Source: Bigelowiella natans CCMP2755 (taxonomy: Eukaryota > Protista > Cercozoa). Taken from it: DNA of 35,964 bases. The notes under the pieces are model-generated. The model worked only from the letters and a program-made list of their open reading frames with translations. It searched no databases and was not told the DNA's origin. Within the stretch, counting starts at the first letter, position 1. The number at the start of each line of letters is the position of its first letter. The stretch spans positions 1 through 35,964 of the forward strand of contig ADNK01002768.1 of assembly GCA_000320545.1 (NCBI GenBank), read 5' to 3'. Below are positions 14,768-24,395 of the stretch, in pieces. Position numbers and translations under genes: made by a program.

Positions 14768-16215
14768 TCAAGCACTGATGAAAGTGTTGAGTCTGGTTGG
14801 TGTAGGAATGAGATTCGGTCTGCTCTCATTGACATAACTGTGTGTTGCTGTGTTGTTCTTGTCATCAGAAATTATGAAAATTGATCTCGGAGAGAGTTGA
14901 TGAATTTTTGTTGGCTTGCGTTTTGGTATGATTTCATCATTTCGTAGGCCTCCTTTAGAGGGGCATAAAACTTTCCAAAAGCACATCCAAGTCGACAAAA
15001 AAGGTTCAAATCGAACATGCGCATAATACTGACAAAACAGATACAACATCATCACCATGTAGAAAAAAGCATCTTCAAAAGGATCATATGTAATAGAGGC
15101 ATTATTTCTTGATTCAGAAAATGACGTGTCTTGGCTAGCTTCTGAGATGGACACTATGACAAGAGCCGATGTAAATGAAACCATGAATGGAAGCAATAGA
15201 TATAAAAACACAAGTAAGATTCTAAGTTTCATTATGATGTTCTTCATAGAGCGATAGCGTGTTTGTTCCCTCGGTGTCATTAAGCTTGTCCTCTGTGATT
15301 GCTCTGAATGCATTCTCATGACTTGTGAGCGCAGTTGTTTCAAAGGAACGATGATGACAGTAAGACTCAATGCTGCAAGAGCAGCGACAATGAATAATCC
15401 AGCCTGGAATTCAAGCTTGTTTTCATAGAGCAATATTGCTACCTAAGTATTTTTAATAACATGAGAATGAAAACTTGAAGTGCCTAAGAACACCTACCAC
15501 CTACCCCAACAAGATTTAAGATAAAAATTCCAATTGCCCAGGCACAAAGTGAAGAACTTAGCCATCTCGGTATTCTTGCCTCTAGCTTTACTCGCGCAAA
15601 AGAGTTCACAACAAGAAGATACCTAAACATAGGAAAAATCGGTTGCGAAGGCTACAATGGGAGCGTAATTGTTACATGACAATGAATCCAATAATGTATC
15701 CTATGCTCTGAAAAAAGAGGAATTGTTACTCATGCACAAAAAACCATTCCATAATATTATATCTGAACTGCCATCCCTCCGTAACAGACTATGCCAACGT
15801 ATTGCCAGCCTACAGCCATTATTGTCACAACTTTTACACGAAGCATTAAAGGGCTCGACAACTTTGCATATATTTTGAATTTTTGTGAACATGCGTAAAG
15901 ACATACATGATGACCTCGCGTACCAAGATATAGAGGTTCATGGATGCCCTAAAATGTTATGTTTTCAAAATCGATTGAGAGCGTGTGAGAATATAATCCT
16001 TTTAGTATCGATGCTGTTCATGAAAGTTTCTGACCAATACAGAAGCAATGTAAAATGCTCCAAAAGCGAGATTTCCCCTGAACACATCATCAATTGCTAT
16101 GAGTTGAGAAGTTGACATGATTGGGTTATTTGAATGCCCTAAATGCTTGCTATGAGGAAACTTTGTGCGTCAAACCATTGCAAAGGTCGTTTAACGCTGT
16201 TTCTATTAACGGCAT
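14768..16215 (-). CDS. Seven-transmembrane, GPCR-like membrane protein
   Basis: Spliced model: MPLIETALNDLCNGLTHK|QLMMCSGEISLLEHFTLLLY|WASMNLYILVRE|LSSPLMLRVKVVTIMAVGWQYVGIVCYGGMA|SIGYIIGFIV|MYLLVVNSFARVKLEARIPRWLSSSLCAWAIGIFILNLVG|VAILLYENKLEFQAGLFIVAALAALSLTVIIVPLKQLR...KLRILLVFLYLLLPFMVSFTSALVIVSI...AFFYMVMMLYLFCQYYA...tail. This gives seven hydrophobic segments, a long basic loop between segments 5 and 6, and a hydrophilic C-tail. The start codon is tentative and no family-defining GPCR motif was recognised. Confidence 0.7.
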
Positions 16216-16539
16216 ATAATATTTGTAGAATGCAGTATGTCTGTAATATAACAAAAAACTAATTTTTAGCGCAAATTTCGACTCATGAATGCGTCTGTGT
16301 TTCGTCGAGTTGTTCGCCGCCTGTGCCATCACAAGGCGTTCAGAATGTGTAATGACCTCTTGAATCAAGGCAAATCCAACCCTGATCGAATCTAAAGGAA
16401 ACGCAACTCAACTTGGATCAGTCACTCGATTCAAAACTGGAGACATGGACATTCGCCAATTCACCAACCTGTGACCAGCCATGGTGAAGTCATCATTTCT
16501 GCGTGACATTTTCGTGCCAAACACGGCGGTTTATCAGAA

Positions 16540-16916
16540 TGCGACATCACTATGTTGCATGAAACTGGATCGGATTTGAAATCCGATCTGTTACTTCCAC
16601 GTTCTCCCCGCTTGTCCTCGAACATGTTCATCACTGTACACGTGGCGGCAACTTCAAACACGTGTCGCAAATACCAGACGCCCTCATTGTGGGTGCGCGC
16701 TCACTCGGCATGACCGCCTTCAGTCCTCCAGTGATTTGAGGACGCTGACTGAACCTTGCACATTTTTTGCGACATTGAATTTTTGTTGTCGCAAAGTGAA
16801 GTATTCGACCTTTTCTTCGTCCCTTCTTGCAATCTGGAGGACTGCGATTTGTCGCTCAGCAAACAGTGCTTCAATTGGCGCATTTTGGGAACGCGACTAC
16901 AATGCGACATGCGACA
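16540..16916. promoter_or_regulatory. Cluster of TGCGACA motifs in the divergent intergenic region (putative cis-element)
   Basis: Exact TGCGACA/TGTCGCA at 16540, 16663, 16768, 16787, 16903 and 16910. 16766-16795 is an inverted pair TTTGCGACA-N12-TGTCGCAAA. A regulatory role is inferred only. Confidence 0.45.
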
Positions 16917-17640
16917 CCAGCTGGTGTTTCAAACTTGATTATGCCAAAAACCATCCACGTGTTTTTAAGAGCAAATGAGACTTCATAGCTCTTCCTGAAT
17001 TTAGCTCGGGGTCCCAAAAATGAGGTCGTACACGGACAGTCACGAAAAATGGCCGTCGTTTTGTCGGATTTGTGGTTAATTACAGAGCAAGCCGCATCTC
17101 ACAGCAAGGAGGTGGTGTGGTTGTAAGAGATTTCTTTATGACAAAGCTGGTCAGACTGCTGTGCGTGTGCCTTGAATTGTGCGTACATGTCGTAGAAAGC
17201 GTGGATGAACATGAATCTAGGCGATATTTGACAAATTGTCAGCGTGCTCGCACGTATTTAGTCAAAAACCGCATGAGGTTGGTGTTCAATGGGCTGTGGA
17301 GAGCTCAAGGCCATTCAAACATGAAAGGGACGTTAGGTCATCTCGACCATGTGACGTGCAGTAAAGCTGTAGAGTAGCCTCGAGGTTCTTCGTTTGACAA
17401 ACAACGTACGTTCAAAAGCCAGTAAGAAACTCCTGCGTGAGCAGAGGATCCAAATTAGCATGTCCACACCGATGATTGACAAATGTAATCATTCAATGAA
17501 GATGCACATAGTTCATCGAATGTGCACAGACTAGATCACATTTGGTTGTTCCGAAACGGAATAATTTGATTGAGTACATTTAATCAACGCCACTTAATAG
17601 TATTAATTCAATTTTAATTGGAACTCTCTTACATTGTAGG

Positions 17641-20600
17641 ATGAAGCAAGAGAATTCAAAAGACTTTGATGAGGATGAAAAGGCCGGAACCTCAGAAATG
17701 CAGCAAGATCGCGCCGTAGTTTCAAATCCAGAAATAAGTCGAGGAATGAGTACAAGCATCGCTGATTTCTCGATTCCAAGAAGCGACGGAGATTCGAAAA
17801 GGTCCTAGTTTCTCAAATGATAGTATGTAAACCTAACAGTATTCGCCTACTGATTACAATCCTATTACGTTACAAGAACTCATTCTCTTTTATAGCCCAA
17901 AATCGATGGACGAAGATGTATCTAATCCGCACATCATACGGCGTAATACAACAAGATTGGGGAGAACTAGGAGGATCGTTATATATCATAAAGATCTAAA
18001 AATTGCAAAACAAAAAGTCCCTAAACTGTATGAGGAAGTTATTAATAGGGTAGAAAAATGTAAAGAGCTGTGGAAGTCTAGTGCGAATTCCAGCAATTTT
18101 CCAGCAAAGTATCGCTGCTCGTGTGATACAGAGATACGATTTCAAAGAGCAAACAAAACTGCACATAGTACCTCGGATTTTGTACGCCATTTACTCAACT
18201 ATTGCCCAGAAATTACGTCAAACTATCAAGATGACATTGATACCGTTCGCAGTATGAAGCAAGCTAGAGGGTTATCTTCAGCTGCAGAGTTTGATAACGC
18301 CAGCCATGATAGTGGAAGTGGGATGTCCCTAGCTGCAGTTGAATCTTCGAGTCCTCTGAGTAGAGTAAATACGAACGGTTTCCATGAGGAAAATGGAGCG
18401 GGGGGTAGTGCAAAAAGGAAAAGATCTAAGTCAGGTTGGTCGGATTAAGTGTAAATCTTCAATCTGCAATAAGTTCTGACTTAATTCTGTTGAAAAGATT
18501 GTCTAGAATTGCTGCATCCTCACAATTCGCGAATCAATGCGTCCTTGTTCTTTGAGCCTTATGAAGAACGAAAGGATAACTTACACTGCAGTATGTTAAA
18601 AATCGGAGCTGCAAAGGGGTGGAAAGGAATAACAACAGGTGAATGCTATATATCCATTCTCCTTACCCCATTCTCTTACTTCAGCAATTTTGTATTTCAG
18701 ATGCCGAGGAGAAATTCCAAATGCAAACATCTGAGTAATATTCGTAAAATATGTAGTCTCCTGTTAGGTAATTATTTGTTTCGAAACAGTTCTCCAGCTG
18801 GAATTCTTCGGGTATTGATAGGCCAAAATAGTGGGTTTGTTTGCATGATTCAAGAACTATTCCGGATGGCTTATGCCCAAGCAACAACTGGCAAGGAAAG
18901 CTATGAGACTGATTTTACATTAAGGTCGATTACATAGATGACAATAAATGTGGATATTAATAAACCAAGTTACCTAATAGATTCTGGTTTGACGAAAATG
19001 TAATTAAGCAACAGCAAATTACAGTCTACATCAAAAAGGTGTAGGCGTGCATTGTTTTGAAACGAAACAGTTGATACATTAGTAAATTGGAAAAACATCA
19101 TCCATTTGAGGTTCTTATTTAGGAAAAAATCAAATCAATTATGAGTTTAAAACTTACAACTCCAGAGGACACAAAGGAGGAGATTGGCCAATCGGAAAGG
19201 TGTATTTGTCATCGTTGCAAGCTTGATTTAGCACATAAGTCTTTGTCTTTAGATTTGTGTGTCGAATGAAAATTCGTACGATTAAAATAAACGAGGAATT
19301 TTTCTGTATCAATGCTTCAGAAAAGAGCGTTCGAAGTACTTTTCCGATAAAATTGTACTATTCAAGAACGATTGTGACATAAACTTTATTTGCAGAGCAT
19401 GCAGATCTTTGTCACGTGGACCCTTTGGTCTATTATCTTCAATTATGTATGAAACGACAACTAATATATTTGAACATCAATGTAGGTAGTATTCGCAACC
19501 CACTGCTTGATTCTTAAGTTTTCATCCCAAATATCCTTATCAACTGACATAAAGAAGCAAGAGGATATTACTGAGGAGGAAAAGGTAGAATTTCATACAT
19601 CGGAATTGACGCAGAGAGAAACAAGTCTGGTTTTGCACAGTTAAGACTTGCTGTATTGGAATTCTTCCGTCGAATTTCAGAGGATTTTGAAGTCGAAGAA
19701 TATATCAAGTAGCAAAGACATTTTCTAACCTAAAATTGACTCCCTAGTCTTAATGACTCCGTAACATGTCCGTGTTTAAATCAGAGCATGGGAAAAAGAA
19801 TCATATGATAGAGCTCGAGTATATGCTGATGCGAAATCTATCGCTCCAGCGGTTAGATATCAACGTTCGAGTTGCATTAAGTTAACTTCCTGCTAATCAT
19901 CTAAGGTTGATGCCATGGAGGTTTTCGATGTTTTCTCTAAAGGTGGTTATTTTGTTTTGTAGCTAACATCCTAGACTTACAAGACTGTGTTATAGGGTAC
20001 AAAGGAGACATTAAAAACACAATCATTAAGCTGAGAAACAGTAACATACGTTTAACCAGCTTTTGGTTAGGTTCTAAATTTTGTGACTAACACTTAGGTA
20101 GTAGCACAGAGGAAGACAGTGACACTAAAAGATACCAAGTAATACTGATAAACAATCATTTTTACATACTTGACATCTTATGTGATATACAGAATAGAAG
20201 CCAAAAAACATTGGGGACTGAAGAGAACAAAGTGTCCGGTATTAGCCGTCGGTATATTCTGTAGAGCAGCATTTACTAAGTAGTTTGTTTAGGCGGGGCT
20301 AGCCTCTTAGAAATTTCAGGCATGCTATTTAAACGAAACACCCAGGTGAAGCAATGCTAGACATCTTGATTCAAATTTTCAACCAAAAGTGTATGTCAGA
20401 ACATAATCATTTCTCGCTGGACAAAGAAATATGCGACGCTTACTTCAGAATACTTTGCTTATTGCGGTTGAATCATCTCTAAGTAGACCCTTTATACTTT
20501 TAATCTGATTCTTTGTACATCTAGCAGAAGGGGATTGGCATGAATTTCCCCAGTTTTTCTTAGATGTTGAAGATGTAAAGGAGGTAACCATTTTTATTCA

Positions 20601-23600
20601 AATGAAAATCTAAAGTTTATGTTATGCAAGTTCGACATCTAATAATATAGGCACAATATGATCCTTCTAGACCAATGGTCTTTAATCTTATTACAGCTAA
20701 GCAAATGTAAAACTCCATCAGTATGCATCTATCTCATTAGTTTTAAGAGTAAATTTTTTGTAGGTATCAATTCAAAGCAATAGATACAACGACAGCATTA
20801 AAATGGGTACAGACTTTTGATCTCATCGTTAAGACACGGGCACACATGCAGGTATCTACGATGTCATTTTTGTCATCGTTCTTAGTATCACAAGTATTAG
20901 ATGGTTATTTCTAAAAGGATACTGGGGATTACGATGAGCTTTGTAGTAAGGCCGAGAAGTTTCAAAGTTATAAATACGAAATTGTACCATGTGCAGCTGA
21001 TTTAAGGTCGGATCCTCTGGGAACTATCCAGTCATTTTCCTCCCATAGACAGGCCAAGCAACACAGGAGGCAAGAGAGTATATCAGCCTCATCTCAAAAC
21101 TCCCCAGCCCCTCATAATACCCCAAGAGCAAGTTGTTCCATACATGTCATTCAAGAGTTCTCAAACTTTATGGAGAAGGATCCTAGCCTAAAATCGAAGG
21201 TATTTTTGTAAATTCATGAATCTATACGCATTTAAACTTCACTATCAATGATCCAGAGTCACCTCTTCGTTCTCGCAGGTGAAGCAGCTCTGTAATGATG
21301 ATCTACAGATATTACTACTTTTCCTCGAAGTCCTTCACCGTACCGAACCTTTTCGAAAAAGTTCAGTTCGTCAAAAGGCTGCACTTTCCAGATCTACAGC
21401 TACATTGCAGAATAAATCCTTAAGCAAGCAAAACCCCCTTTCAATTCCCGGGCAGCAACATTCTGACTATGAGAGTGATGCAACCTTTCAAAATGCGTTA
21501 CTTAATCCGATTGGAATTCCAAGGGACACTAAATTACATTCTTCAAGTTCCAATCTTCGCCCTAACCTGTTAACGTGTTTACCAGAGAAGTCTACTTCAA
21601 CAGATCGGTCTACTGTTCCAGCTCAAATTAAGAAGTCTATTTCGACAGATTTGTCGACTGTAGGTGGACTTCCGCAGGCAAAAAAATCTATTTTATCGCG
21701 CTTCAGTGTCCAAGAAATTGCACATATTTATTCCTACCTTCGGAACACAGAGGATACGAAAGCAGGAATTTCAAATAGAAAAACTGTAGCTGATGCAGAA
21801 AATATTCAGACTAAAGGGCTTTTGTCAAATTTTTCAATTAGATTGAATCTCTTGCGTAATGTCAAGCAACTATTAATGGTACAAATGCTCTTTTTCTCCC
21901 ATTCGAAAATTGTGTTCTAACACTGATAAAACTTGATAGGAGGAACGATATTGTAAATCTCTCCATGAAGGCCCCGTATGCTGGCATGCCTGTATAATAT
22001 CTCATTTGTTTTATCGGGAGGAAGACGATTCAAAAACAGATGAAGAAGCGCATGATTTATCAACTCTTACCTTGGAAATACTGATCAATGCTCTTCTCTA
22101 TCCGGTACATAGCTTGATTCCTACAGGTGATGGAAAAATCAGAATGATGCATCTAAAAGATTTTTCGAGAAACCTTCGAGTTTCCGTTGCTCTCATATTG
22201 TCTGTAGCAACCAATGAGAAGGTAATCTTTACTGGATTTTACTTCATAGAGTGAAAATGACTATCTGTCTCTTTAGGGTATAAGAATTGTATCGGAATTT
22301 TTCGGTATGTTATTCTCTCGACTCTCCAAAGAGATACCCTGGATTGATCTTGCTCATACTTGGGACTGTATCAATCATACAATTGGGATCATCCTTACAA
22401 TGGTACTCCTCAGACCAATAAATGGAAATCTTGGCCTCCGTGACCCTCTTCAAGAGGACGTTATGAAAATAAACATACAGGATGAAAAGTATTTTGAAAA
22501 TACCGTTTTGTCCATAAATCTTCTCCCCTCAACACAGCATAACACTGCAAATACGAATACAAGATCTGATACTAGTAACAGTACTACAATCAATCCTGCA
22601 GTTGCAGCAATGATAGACGCAGCAAAGAGAGAGGCGGAGAGAGATGCTACGCTGCTTCATATTGTTGGGACCCCTTCTGATATTATACTGGAAAATCTTA
22701 TTAAACTTTGCTATAAGAATTCCGCAAGCTTTGAGAAAGATGAATTTGCTCTAGCATCTTGGTTTGACGAGAAAGGAAATAGAATGCATGTAGTGGAGAG
22801 CTATGTAAGAAAAGCCCAGAAATTACATAAGAGCGGAACCAAGCAATTCAATTATGGTTTAATTTGGAAGGATAAGCTTCGAAATCACATAAAACTCCTG
22901 CGAAAGATTCATGGTTTTTTAAAAGAACTTTCCTGCCAAGCTCTTCGCCAAATAGAGTCGTCCGATGGTGAGAAATATGACCTCTCTTCTAAGGAAAAAC
23001 GAATCCAATCTATGAACATGTTTTACTTACCATTTATTAGCGACACTATCGCATTGCTGAGTCTAATAGACAGTAGATTGTACGAGCCTCTGGATAAGAT
23101 GGGTAATATTGGTAGTTATATCCAACATTTTTGTAAGGAATTTGATCAAACGAAACGAGGGAAACTTTTCCGAGCGACCCAAAAAATAATGTTGAAGAGA
23201 GAAAGAGAGAATTCCACACGATTGGATAAAAAACTCATACAATTGAACCAAGATCGGAGAAAGATGTTTGAGATTTTACTAGTTGGGCCTGAACAGTCAG
23301 GAAAAAGTACAATTTATAAGCAGTTTGTTCATCTCCACGGTACAGGTTTTCGAGATCAAGAAAGATTAAAATATAGATCTCCTGTTTATCAAAATATTAT
23401 AGGATCACTACAAAATCTAATTCGTCACGCTTCTGATAGGATCGCAGAGCAAAAAGATTTGAACGAAAGTTGCCAATTAATCATGGAACAGAAAAAGCTT
23501 GTTTACATGACTTTGAAGCTCCGGAAAGCAATTCTAAGAGTTTGGAACTCCGAAGTTATTAAAAGCACATATGAAAAGCGGTCTGAATTCAAAGTTTGCC

Positions 23601-24395
23601 AGCTTGATGATTCTAGTCACTATTTCCTGAGCAACCTAGGCAGAATAATTACAGATACATTGCCCAACCAACCGTCACATCTTTCACCAAGGCAAAGAAG
23701 CGCAGTTGAAGACGATGGATACGTACCAACACTAGCTGATGTTTTAAATTGTCGAAAAAGAACACCTCATCTTGTTCAGGGGAAATTTAGTGTTCGCACA
23801 GAGTCAGGATCTTCAAAGGATTTTCTTGTAGTTGATAGCGCAGGTCAAAGAGGCTCTAGAAGAAAATGGATCCCATTCTTTGATTCGTGTGATTGTGTCT
23901 TGTTGGTATTATCACTCGTGGGTTATAATAGATATCTCCGAGAACAACCTGACGTCCTAAGAATGCACGAGGCTATAAATCTATTCACGGATATTTTTTG
24001 CCAGTCAACCCTTGAGAACAAGCCTTTTATTATTTTCTTAAACAAATACGATCTTTTTGCGATGGATTTGTTGACTACACCTTTAAGCCGTTGCTTCCCA
24101 GACTATGCAAGGGAACCGGATACTGAACCTGGTAGTAAAGAGGATGTTGATAAGGCTATCGCATTTATCAAAAGAAAAATATTGCGAAAATCTATAAACC
24201 AGCTTGCTAGGTAATTCATTCCAATTGCTAACATGTTGTCTTCAATTCAATTACATGATTCTACTCAGGACAAGATCCAAACCCATATTTCATATCACAT
24301 GCGCTACTGACACTCGCCAAGTGGATAGAATCTTCGTATCAGTGCTACACATAGTTCTCAGGGAAAATATTCAAGCTGCAGGATTGTTGTATTGA
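17641..24395 (+). CDS. Extra-large G-alpha fusion protein (~1,700 aa): N-terminal extension, PH domain, C-terminal heterotrimeric G-alpha domain
   Basis: About 25 short (~53-94 nt) GT-AG introns can be chained in phase from ATG 17641 to TGA 24395. PH domain exons 20293-20851: EISGMLFKR...SRWTKKYATLTSEYFAYC...MVFNLIT...YQFKAIDTTTALKWVQTF. G-alpha motifs: G1 GPEQSGKST (23285-23311), switch I CRKRT, G3 DSAGQRGSRRKW (23834), G4 FLNKYD (NKYD at 24041), G5 TCATDT (24297), C-terminus ENIQAAGLLY. An AG just before the ATG allows for a further upstream exon. Confidence 0.85.

What the first reader, a model, noticed from the sequence alone, without database searches (positions are those of the whole stretch)
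17641..24395. Giant G-alpha: ~1,350-aa N-terminal extension with a PH domain fused to a complete G-alpha domain
Seen: a phase-continuous chain of ~26 exons links an unambiguous PH domain (20293-20851) to a G-alpha GTPase with G1-G5 and a G-alpha-type C-terminus (ENIQAAGLLY). The single exon ORF 22307-24214 already fuses ~300 aa of non-G-alpha sequence to the GTPase. Established: canonical G-alpha subunits are ~350-400 aa and membrane-anchored by N-terminal lipidation, and plant XLGs have long extensions but not, as far as I know, a PH domain. Inference: there is no MG lipidation start, so the PH domain may replace lipid anchoring. This would be an independently evolved, phosphoinositide-targeted extra-large G protein.
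Basis: partly seen in the sequence, partly recalled or inferred. Interest (0 to 1): 0.85.

Follow-up and report, generated by a model that had tools for sequence, protein, structure and literature searches.

The report
Giant PH-solenoid-G-alpha protein, Bigelowiella
The alga Bigelowiella natans expresses a gene that joins a lipid-binding PH domain and a long helical scaffold to a complete, apparently active G-protein alpha subunit.

Summary
The core observation holds. The window is Bigelowiella natans nuclear DNA. Assembled transcripts from several independent studies splice the PH exons (20293-20851) in frame to the G-alpha exon. Read from a spliced transcript, the PH domain passes Pfam's threshold (32.7 bits, cut-off 25.1) and G-alpha scores E 1.7e-75. 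The G1-G5 motifs, the catalytic Arg and Gln, and a G-alpha-type C-terminus are all present.

The length is not confirmed. The first reading frame (ATG 17641, exons E1-E5, 334 codons, possibly a BED zinc finger) ends at TGA 19139-41. In every observed junction it is out of frame with the PH-G-alpha frame. The supported product is 1,171-1,234 aa (ATG 19915 or 20322), with about 800-860 aa ahead of G-alpha. A 1,668-aa fusion needs a junction that was not observed (19038 to 19486).

Orthologues of 1,409-1,424 aa in Chlorarachnion, Gymnochlora and Amorphochlora carry an N-terminal PH, a DUF4704-like (neurobeachin-type) solenoid and G-alpha. A sister group adds RGS. None starts with Met-Gly. The public JGI model covers only the 380-aa G-alpha part.

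I found no paper describing this architecture. This scan has already flagged paralogues of the family on other DNA of the same genome (s1-729311, s1-707992). Verdict: a real, new variant of extra-large G-alpha. Its function is inferred, not shown.

The parts
17278..17405 (+). 5' untranslated exon (E0) of the long transcript. Its 5' end is approximate.
   Evidence: Loose ends of the X1 and X6 contigs map to 17376-17405. L005 bases 1-120 align to 17287-17406. The GT-AG intron is 17406-17639.
17641..18924 (+). ORF1, 334 open codons in exons E1 17640-17801, E2 17896-18434, E3 18507-18638, E4 18701-18734 and E5 18790-18924. Probably a separate upstream cistron or gene, with a possible BED-type zinc finger in E2.
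   Evidence: Frames were checked. Pfam finds nothing. The only database relative is the same locus in another strain. The protein atlas gives a zf-BED lead at score 0.90. No homologue lies in the orthologues' loci.
18981..19038 (+). Alternative exon E5b (58 nt). It is the only way to bring ORF1 into phase with the PH-G-alpha frame, and only if spliced on to 19486.
   Evidence: The junction 18924 to 18981 is seen in the first sub-contig of L005, which then runs on unspliced to 19080, with an in-frame TAG at 19042. Donor 19039 scores 4.1 bits and the acceptor 5.9 bits. The junction 19038 to 19486 was not observed.
19123..19199 (+). Exon E6 (77 nt). ORF1 ends here at TGA 19139-41, and the PH-G-alpha frame (+1 relative to ORF1) opens here.
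   Evidence: The X5 and X6 contigs and the second sub-contig of L005 join 18924 to 19123 and 19199 to 19486. Frames were checked.
19486..20238 (+). Exons E7-E13: 19486-19584, 19641-19708, 19785-19851, 19906-19942, 19996-20040, 20098-20138 and 20193-20238. They are open in the PH-G-alpha frame. The first in-frame ATG is at 19915-19917 in the context GCCATGG, which gives a 1,234-aa product.
   Evidence: The joints are seen in three runs and are exact GT-AG. Frames were checked.
20239..20292 (+). A 54-nt GT-AG intron, often retained. When retained, an in-frame TAA at 20277 cuts the frame. The next ATG, at 20322, then gives the 1,171-aa product.
   Evidence: It is retained in X6, L005 and L006. 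Unitig breaks at 20292/3 in X1 and X5 and frame continuity indicate that it is also spliced out.
20293..20851 (+). PH domain, carried on five exons: 20293-20345, 20400-20466, 20528-20583, 20651-20706 and 20764-20851.
   Evidence: PF00169 scores E 1.1e-7 and 32.7 bits (cut-off 25.1) on the spliced L005:1963-2400. Blastp to the orthologues' PH regions gives E 1e-14 to 1e-16.
20918..21878 (+). Linker exons E19 20918-21199 and E20 21279-21878. The sequence is Ser/Thr/Pro-rich and probably disordered.
   Evidence: No Pfam hit. The region aligns poorly in the family alignment. pLDDT is below 50 at the start of the model.
21940..23200 (+). Alpha-solenoid plus a conserved pre-G-alpha helical region (E21 21940-22221 and the first part of E22). 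It is homologous to the DUF4704-like (neurobeachin/BDCP) region of the orthologues.
   Evidence: Blastp aligns ORF2 residues 548-701 with P0156 residues 461-628 at E 1.5e-6. Orthologues match PF15787 at E 5e-6 to 4e-9. The AlphaFold2 model is all-helical with pTM 0.70. Structure searches return only generic helical-repeat matches.
23207..24395 (+). G-alpha domain, on the rest of E22 up to 24210, then intron 24211-24268, then E23 24269-24395 with stop TGA 24393-24395. It has an alpha-N helix, a helical domain and motifs G1-G5.
   Evidence: PF00503 scores E 1.7e-75 on the spliced ORF. The match to solved Gt/Gi/gustducin chains is E 2e-44 over residues 28-368 of a 369-residue chain. Motifs were read.

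Best explanation
The locus encodes an extra-large G-protein alpha subunit of about 1,171-1,234 residues. From N- to C-terminus it has a PH domain, a disordered Ser/Pro-rich linker, an alpha-solenoid related to the DUF4704 region of neurobeachin-type proteins, a conserved helical region, and a complete G-alpha.

Shown:
- These parts form one spliced, expressed reading frame.
- The domain identities are established.
- The protein is orthologous to 1,409-1,424-aa proteins of other chlorarachniophytes.
- The nucleotide-binding and catalytic residues are intact: the P-loop GPEQSGKST, the switch I Arg and Thr, the switch II DxxGQ, NKYD and TCATD.
- No candidate start has an N-terminal Met-Gly.

Inferred:
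- The G-alpha is a working GTP switch.
- Lacking a lipid anchor, it is held at membranes by its PH domain.
- The solenoid serves as a built-in scaffold for partners.
- The conserved alpha-N helix and the C-terminal ...AAGLL tail leave coupling to G-beta-gamma and 7TM receptors possible.
- In B. natans the switch I residues that RGS proteins contact (canonical T-T-G) read T-P-H. From memory of the RGS-insensitive G183S/G184S mutants, this predicts insensitivity to RGS.

The 334-codon frame upstream (17641-19141) is most likely a separate cistron or gene. It shares long read-through or conjoined transcripts with the G-alpha gene and is not part of the G protein.
For: Transcript evidence:
- The X1 (3,493 nt) and X5 (3,695 nt) contigs run from 20292 into the G-alpha exon. 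The X6 contig (5,749 nt) covers the whole locus.
- The JGI transcripts L001, L005 and L006 agree.
- All 22 introns are GT-AG, and 20 of them are 53-94 nt long.

Domains:
- Searches identify PH and G-alpha. One search aligns the G-alpha region end to end with solved G-alpha chains.

Family:
- One search lists long relatives. Searches show PH + DUF4704 + G-alpha in P0009, P0010, P0156 and P0072, and PH + RGS (+GYF) + G-alpha in P0012, P0015 and P0164. In P0013, whose gene call starts inside the PH, only RGS + G-alpha was found.
- names Chlorarachnion, Gymnochlora, Amorphochlora and Partenskyella as sources.
- In a quick tree, the giant G-alpha domains fall on one side of a branch (SH-aLRT 84). 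They split into two subclades at 99, and B. natans lies in the solenoid-only subclade.

Start site:
- The orthologues' Met1 lies about 25 residues before the PH domain, and the C. reptans 5'UTR is only 163 nt.
- ATG 19915 sits in the context GCCATGG.
- L006 starts at 19379.
- Read depth rises downstream of E6 in X1 and X5.
Against: - The PH-G-alpha frame stays open for 106 codons (E6-E9) upstream of its first ATG. This has a chance probability of about 5e-4 and suggests that coding sequence enters from upstream.
- Intron 20239-20292 is retained in three assemblies, so the exact N-terminus is unsettled.
- Nothing here tests lipid binding, GTPase activity or binding partners.
- The PH domain has only part of the canonical phosphoinositide motif: Lys in beta1, and W-T-K-K-Y instead of W-[KR]-x-R-[WY] in beta2.
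- Pfam does not detect DUF4704 in the B. natans sequence itself, only in its orthologues.
Confidence: 0.7

Rival explanations
1. One reading: one protein of about 1,670 aa that starts at ATG 17641. ORF1 would be joined in phase to the PH-G-alpha frame by using exon E5b (18981-19038) and skipping E6. E5b and E6 would then behave as mutually exclusive exons that switch the fusion on or off.
For: - The path E5 to E5b to E7 is the only phase-continuous one. It gives 1,668 codons without a stop (and my own frame bookkeeping).
- The junction 18924 to 18981 exists in L005.
- The splice-site scores fall within this gene's range.
- It would explain the 106 open codons upstream of ATG 19915.
Against: - The junction 19038 to 19486 was not seen.
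- The L005 contig reads through 19039-19080 into an in-frame TAG.
- X5, X6 and L005 all join E5 to E6 to E7, which ends ORF1 at TGA 19139-41.
- X5 shows no extra depth over E5b.
- The orthologues have nothing upstream of the PH domain.
- ORF1 looks like an unrelated BED-finger protein (a weak lead).
Confidence: 0.25
2. The PH exons and the G-alpha exon belong to separate mRNAs, and the apparent link is an assembly artefact across neighbouring genes.
For: Contigs can merge overlapping transcripts (caveat printed). The public JGI model 43485 covers only the 380-aa G-alpha part.
Against: - Fifteen exact GT-AG exon-exon junctions chain the PH exons to the G-alpha exon in three studies and in two JGI transcripts.
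- The frame is continuous across them.
- Orthologues encode the same fusion, one of them as a complete ORF on a transcript.
Confidence: 0.02
3. The architecture is the same, but the PH domain is not a lipid anchor. It would be a protein-binding module, for example for G-beta-gamma as in the GRK2 PH domain, or for the protein's own G-alpha or solenoid. The protein would then act as a soluble scaffold switch of the ROCO/LRRK type, independent of receptors.
For: The phosphoinositide motif is incomplete. The G domain is embedded at the end of a long helical scaffold. The conserved RRKxF segment directly precedes the alpha-N helix.
Against: Basic residues are kept at two of the three key PH positions across the family. 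The conserved C-terminal ...AAGLL tail argues for receptor-type or Ric-8-type contacts. No direct test was made either way.
Confidence: 0.25

Closest known systems
Plant extra-large G proteins (XLG1-3)
   Same: [quoted passage not shown]
   Different: The XLG extension carries a nuclear localisation signal and a Cys-rich region (PMC3718340), not a PH domain plus alpha-solenoid. Arabidopsis XLG2 is reported to lack key nucleotide-binding residues (bioRxiv 10.1101/795088), whereas this protein keeps them. XLGs are plant-specific. No joint phylogeny was run.
Canonical heterotrimeric G-alpha (Gi/Gt/gustducin class, e.g. 8yky_A, 1got_A)
   Same: The match is end to end (E 2e-44). It covers the alpha-N helix, the helical domain, G1-G5, the catalytic Arg and Gln, and a C-terminal hydrophobic tail.
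   Different: - The G-alpha domain sits at residues about 859-1221 of a roughly 1,234-aa protein.
- There is no Met-Gly or Cys lipidation site.
- The P-loop reads GPEQSGKST rather than GAGESGKST.
- Switch I reads R-K-R-T-P-H rather than R-V-K-T-T-G.
- A 20-residue insert precedes switch I.
Chlorarachniophyte PH-solenoid-G-alpha proteins, database entries annotated only as hypothetical or uncharacterized: Chlorarachnion reptans P0009, Gymnochlora P0010, Amorphochlora GAB5370219.1 (P0156)
   Same: They are collinear with this protein over PH, solenoid, pre-G-alpha helices and G-alpha. Overall identity to them is 30-33%, and 46-51% within G-alpha. They fall in the same Gα subclade, with 99% SH-aLRT support.
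   Different: The B. natans protein is about 180 aa shorter. It lacks the N-terminal part of the solenoid and the long insert in the helical domain. It has a degenerate YPRLKxLKD...WQAWLLPLLFD motif and a long branch in the tree. It also carries an unusual 5' region containing ORF1.
PH-RGS(-GYF)-solenoid-G-alpha relatives (Partenskyella P0164, P0012, P0013, and B. natans locus C2963)
   Same: The same PH, solenoid and G-alpha backbone. They form the sister subclade.
   Different: They carry an RGS domain, and often a GYF domain, between the PH domain and the solenoid. They keep the switch I Gly that RGS proteins need. The window's gene has no RGS domain and reads T-P-H at that position.
BEACH-domain proteins (neurobeachin, LRBA)
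   Same: The orthologues' solenoid matches Pfam DUF4704, the neurobeachin/BDCP alpha-solenoid region.
   Different: There is no BEACH domain, no PH-BEACH unit and no WD40 repeats. The match is weak and is not detected in the B. natans sequence itself.

Membership tests
G-protein alpha subunit (Pfam PF00503) | Profile match above the curated cut-off, covering both the Ras-like and the helical domain | tested here: met
   254.7 bits against a cut-off of 48.8, covering profile positions 2-332 of 333, on the spliced ORF. The match to solved G-alpha chains is end to end.
G-protein alpha subunit (Pfam PF00503) | Nucleotide-binding motifs G1-G5 and the catalytic Arg (switch I) and Gln (switch II) | tested here: met
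   GPEQSGKST, R-K-R-T, D-S-A-G-Q-R, NKYD and TCATD align to the canonical motifs.
G-protein alpha subunit (Pfam PF00503) | N-terminal lipid modification (Met-Gly myristoylation and/or Cys palmitoylation next to the alpha-N helix) | tested here: not met
   The candidate starts read MEVFDV (19915), MLFKRN (20322) and MKQENS (17641). The orthologues start MTAVSS, MLQHMP and MDERKP. The alpha-N helix is internal.
G-protein alpha subunit (Pfam PF00503) | Binds G-beta-gamma and is activated by a 7TM receptor | not testable with these tools
   Only the conserved alpha-N helix and the C-terminal tail are visible. No complex prediction was run.
PH domain (Pfam PF00169) | Profile match above the curated cut-off | tested here: met
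   32.7 bits against a cut-off of 25.1, E 1.1e-7, profile positions 2-101 of 105, on L005:1963-2400. The score is only 22.2 bits if translation starts at ATG 20322.
PH domain (Pfam PF00169) | Phosphoinositide-binding basic motif K-Xn-[KR]-x-R in beta1/beta2 | tested here: inconclusive
   The beta1 Lys is present. Beta2 reads W-T-K-K-Y in B. natans and W-V-K-R-Y in the orthologues. The motif definition is from memory.
Plant extra-large G proteins (XLG) | N-terminal extension with an NLS and a Cys-rich region; plant lineage | tested here: not met
   The extension is PH plus linker plus alpha-solenoid. The organism is a rhizarian alga. The XLG features are taken from PMC3718340.
Chlorarachniophyte PH-solenoid-G-alpha family (undescribed) | Collinear homology over the N-terminal PH, the solenoid, the pre-G-alpha RRKxF region and a G-alpha with a GP(G/E)QSGKST P-loop | tested here: met
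   Four collinear blastp segments align to P0009, P0010 and P0156. Family-invariant residues lie in all four regions. The tree places it in the solenoid-only subclade.
BEACH-domain proteins | BEACH domain with PH-BEACH and WD40 repeats | tested here: not met
   No such Pfam hit appears in the B. natans ORF or in its orthologues.

The most novel reading that the evidence does not exclude
Chlorarachniophytes may have evolved a distinct class of giant, lipid-anchor-free G-alpha proteins. In this class a PH domain and a neurobeachin-like solenoid would make the G-alpha a self-contained, membrane-targeted scaffold switch, with RGS-bearing and RGS-insensitive paralogues dividing the labour. At this locus, mutually exclusive exons (E5b or E6) would additionally decide between two outcomes: a BED-finger ORF fused onto the G protein (1,668 aa), or the two proteins made separately from one transcription unit.
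Probability: 0.15. Interest if true: 0.75.

Novelty: new variant of a known kind. Interest (0 to 1): 0.6.

Why it matters
G-alpha subunits are regarded as small (350-400 aa), lipid-anchored proteins, with the plant XLGs as the classic extra-large exception. This locus shows a second, unrelated route to an extra-large G-alpha. It is conserved across a whole algal class, keeps its catalytic residues, and comes in versions with and without a built-in RGS domain.

Surveys of G-protein evolution that relied on the JGI gene models saw only a 380-aa G-alpha at this locus, so the fusion escaped them. De Mendoza et al. 2014 (PMC3971589) noted only a B. natans G-alpha expansion.

The family offers a natural experiment in replacing lipid anchoring with a PH domain, and in wiring a G-alpha to a scaffold in cis. 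From my own knowledge, not checked here, Amorphochlora can be transformed, which would make the idea testable.

The finding also shows that the gene model at this locus needs correction.

Tried and rejected
- Exon-by-exon tblastn of the orthologues against the window found only the last two exons, because the other exons are too short.
- Pfam on single exons E19-E22 and on the ORF1 exons gave nothing.
- An exact-pattern scan of metagenome contigs for exon E7 found nothing, although L005 contains the pattern. Records of this organism are therefore left out of that collection, and no second scan was made.
- An alternative acceptor at 19166 would fix the frame, but it scores -4.1 bits and was rejected.
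- Other routes to a fused frame were considered: an alternative donor at 18831, an E6 variant ending at 19201, the long form of E6 (19123-19335) with 19396-19584, and frameshifting or slippage at the A6 run (19124-19129). All either hit stop codons or have no support. The A6 run is identical in every RNA contig.
- Strain differences are too few to give dN/dS for E6-E13.
- Foldseek and VIA-align searches with the solenoid model gave only generic helical-repeat matches. Foldseek found no match at E <= 0.001. The best VIA Z was 10.6, below the level that is meaningful for helical repeats.
- Anantharaman et al. 2011 (Gene 475:63), the paper most likely to list G-alpha fusions, is not held.
- The joined spliced model built from the window was never sent to a search or folding tool. 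The transcript loci L005 and L006 served as references instead. The joined frame was checked only inside scripts.
- No complex prediction was run.
Full report
**Organism and starting point.** The large ORF 22307-24211 matches Pfam G-alpha (PF00503) at E 1.7e-69 over its residues 301-628. About 300 non-G-alpha residues therefore lie in the same exon. Its only identical database protein is the JGI model Bigna1/43485 of Bigelowiella natans. That model is 380 aa and covers only the G-alpha part. The window is thus nuclear DNA of a chlorarachniophyte alga (Rhizaria), and the public gene model is truncated.

**Transcript structure.** Contigs of three RNA data sets from three different studies were laid on 17600-23590.
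- They show fifteen exon-exon joints that are identical in all three runs. All resolve to exact GT-AG introns of 53-79 nt.
- One X6 contig of 5,749 nt spans from 17640 to beyond 23590.
- The X1 (3,493 nt) and X5 (3,695 nt) contigs run from 20292 into the G-alpha exon.
- Three JGI transcript records of other B. natans strains agree: L001 (2,747 nt), L005 (5,661 nt) and L006 (4,263 nt).
- The last intron is 24211-24268. It gives ...QLAR/TRSKPIFH... and the C-terminus ENIQAAGLLY.

My exon model has one 5'UTR exon (up to 17405) and 23 further exons, listed under parts. All 22 introns between these 23 exons are GT-AG.

Three introns are retained in the X6, L005 or L006 contigs: 17802-17895, 18435-18506 and 20239-20292. 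I take them to be introns for three reasons. Unitigs break exactly at their borders in X1 and X5. Their sizes are typical for this gene. The frame closes only when they are removed.

**The PH domain and the fusion.** Anchored at the stop codon, the frame is open back through the PH exons, and on to exon E6, once intron 20239-20292 is removed. That is 1,340 codons.
- On the spliced transcript, L005:1993-5505 (1,171 aa) gives G-alpha at E 1.7e-75 and PH at 22.2 bits.
- Adding the ten residues upstream of ATG 20322, which are the same in the spliced and retained forms, raises PH (PF00169) to 32.7 bits and E 1.1e-7. This is above the curated cut-off of 25.1 and covers profile positions 2-101 of 105.
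- The same stretch aligns to the PH regions of the orthologues at E 1e-14 to 1e-16.

The central observation is therefore confirmed: a PH domain and a G-alpha lie in one expressed reading frame.

**Where the protein starts.**
- The frame opened by ATG 17641 (ORF1) is open for 334 codons through E1-E5.
- In the E5 to E6 to E7 junctions seen in X5, X6 and L005, ORF1 ends at TGA 19139-41. The PH-G-alpha frame is +1 relative to it.
- A second form in L005 joins E5 to 18981 and reads on to an in-frame TAG at 19042.
- An acceptor at 19166 would repair the frame, but it scores -4.1 bits.
- The only phase-continuous path is E5, then E5b 18981-19038, then E7. It gives 1,668 aa. Its second junction was not observed.

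Four points argue against a fusion:
- The orthologues start about 25 residues before the PH domain.
- The complete C. reptans transcript has a 163-nt 5'UTR and nothing resembling ORF1.
- L006 starts at 19379.
- Read depth rises downstream of E6.

ORF1 has no Pfam match. It carries a C-x-C...H-x4-C pattern, and a language-model search links it weakly to BED zinc fingers.

One point argues for a fusion. The PH-G-alpha frame is open for 106 codons upstream of its first ATG (19915, in the context GCCATGG). By chance this has a probability of about 5e-4.

My reading is that the G protein is 1,234 aa, or 1,171 aa from ATG 20322 when the intron is retained. I give the 1,668-aa fusion about 25%.

**Family.** A search of 1.84 billion representative proteins gave a tight group of long relatives well above all canonical G-alphas.
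- Pfam shows PH + DUF4704 (neurobeachin/BDCP solenoid) + G-alpha in Chlorarachnion reptans (1,409 aa), Gymnochlora (1,411 aa), Amorphochlora (1,424 aa, annotated as hypothetical protein) and P0072.
- Pfam shows PH + RGS (+GYF) + G-alpha in Partenskyella (P0164, and its truncated cluster representative P0015) and in P0012. P0013, whose gene call starts inside the PH region, shows RGS + G-alpha. P0012 and P0013 come from unidentified assemblies.
- The family alignment is collinear from the PH domain to the C-terminus. Invariant residues lie in the solenoid, in a pre-G-alpha RRKxF segment and in G-alpha.
- In a quick tree, the giant G-alpha domains fall on one side of a branch (SH-aLRT 84) and split into two subclades at 99. 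B. natans lies in the solenoid-only subclade on a long branch.
- The B. natans genome has about 30 G-alpha loci. At least three further loci resemble the giant family: C2963, C2461 and C484.
- Two earlier notes of this scan describe such paralogues on other DNA. Only their existence was checked here.

**The G-alpha domain.** It aligns end to end with solved Gt, Gi and gustducin chains at E 2e-44. The following are present:
- the alpha-N helix;
- the P-loop GPEQSGKST;
- switch I R-K-R-T, with the catalytic Arg and the Mg-binding Thr;
- switch II D-S-A-G-Q-R, with the catalytic Gln;
- NKYD and TCATD;
- a hydrophobic C-terminal tail.

Unlike its relatives, B. natans reads T-P-H where canonical proteins read T-T-G. 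From my memory of the RGS-insensitive G183S/G184S mutants, this predicts loss of RGS sensitivity. That is an inference, not a test.

**The middle region.** An AlphaFold2 model of residues 340-800 is all-helical, with pTM 0.70 and pLDDT of 70-90 in two blocks. Structure searches gave only generic ARM/HEAT-like matches. I therefore describe it as an alpha-solenoid scaffold and no more.

**Mechanism.**
- Shown: the architecture, its expression, and the conservation of the catalytic residues.
- Inferred: the PH domain replaces lipid anchoring, the solenoid scaffolds partners, and the G-alpha acts as a GTP switch that may still meet G-beta-gamma and 7TM receptors.
- The PH domain keeps only part of the classical phosphoinositide motif, so a protein-binding role is a live rival.

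**Literature.** Seven full-text searches found no description of a PH-G-alpha or solenoid-G-alpha fusion. De Mendoza et al. 2014 (PMC3971589) note a B. natans-specific G-alpha expansion but no such architecture. Anantharaman et al. 2011 could not be read.

The joined spliced model built from the window was not sent to any search or folding tool. Transcript loci served as references, and the joined frame was checked only in scripts.

**Verdict.** This is a real new variant of a known kind of protein, but it is shorter than claimed. It is one member of a family that this scan has already met elsewhere in the same genome.

Noticed in passing
window 17641-19141: A 334-codon upstream frame (ORF1) in the 5' part of the long transcripts. 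It has no Pfam match and no relatives outside B. natans. It carries a C-x-C...H-x4-C pattern, and a weak language-model lead points to BED zinc fingers. It may be a separate gene conjoined with the G-alpha gene by splicing.
   Followed up: partly
window 17802-17895, 18435-18506, 20239-20292: Three of the 22 introns are retained in several independent transcript assemblies, and each brings in a stop codon. The other introns are cleanly removed. This may be regulated intron retention.
   Followed up: partly
window 18925-19485: A hot spot of alternative splicing lies between E5 and E7. It includes exon E5b (from 18981), E6 (19123-19199), a long E6 form (19123-19335) spliced to 19396, and a transcript (L006) that starts at 19379. 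The two introns here (198 and 286 nt) are far longer than this gene's usual 53-94 nt.
   Followed up: partly
L001:531-533 = window 22163-22196: Transcript contig L001 lacks 34 nt that have no GT-AG ends and are flanked by a 3-nt repeat. The loss shifts the frame. It is absent from all other contigs, so it is probably an assembly or reverse-transcription artefact.
   Followed up: partly
L005:1388-1397: L005 is a scaffold with a 10-N gap. It places two alternative isoforms, both containing the end of E5, one after the other. It is not a single molecule.
   Followed up: yes
G000:C2963:103378-108620 (-), C2461:61457-64930 (-), C484:33657-38222 (+): These are further loci in the same genome related to the giant family. 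C2963 matches the PH-RGS-solenoid-G-alpha type over nearly its full length. For C2461 and C484 only the PH and solenoid parts matched clearly. Neither appears among the PF00503 hits, so their G-alpha may be degenerate.
   Followed up: partly
window 14768-17000, minus strand: A head-to-head neighbour gene with hydrophobic, membrane-protein-like ORFs (for example 14768-15433). Another first-stage note calls it 7TM-like. The shared promoter region would lie at about 17000-17280.
   Followed up: no
L007 (GCA_014466275.1), L008 (GCA_977009605.1), L002 (ENA metagenome scaffold): In these unidentified assemblies the family members are encoded without introns (for example 1,477 aa from 4,434 nt). The B. 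natans gene, by contrast, has 22 introns. The family may extend beyond the cultured chlorarachniophytes.
   Followed up: no
window 23207-24395; JGI model Bigna1/43485: The public gene model covers only the last 380 residues and uses a slightly different final splice (QLAR/SKP instead of QLAR/TRSKP). The locus needs re-annotation.
   Followed up: yes
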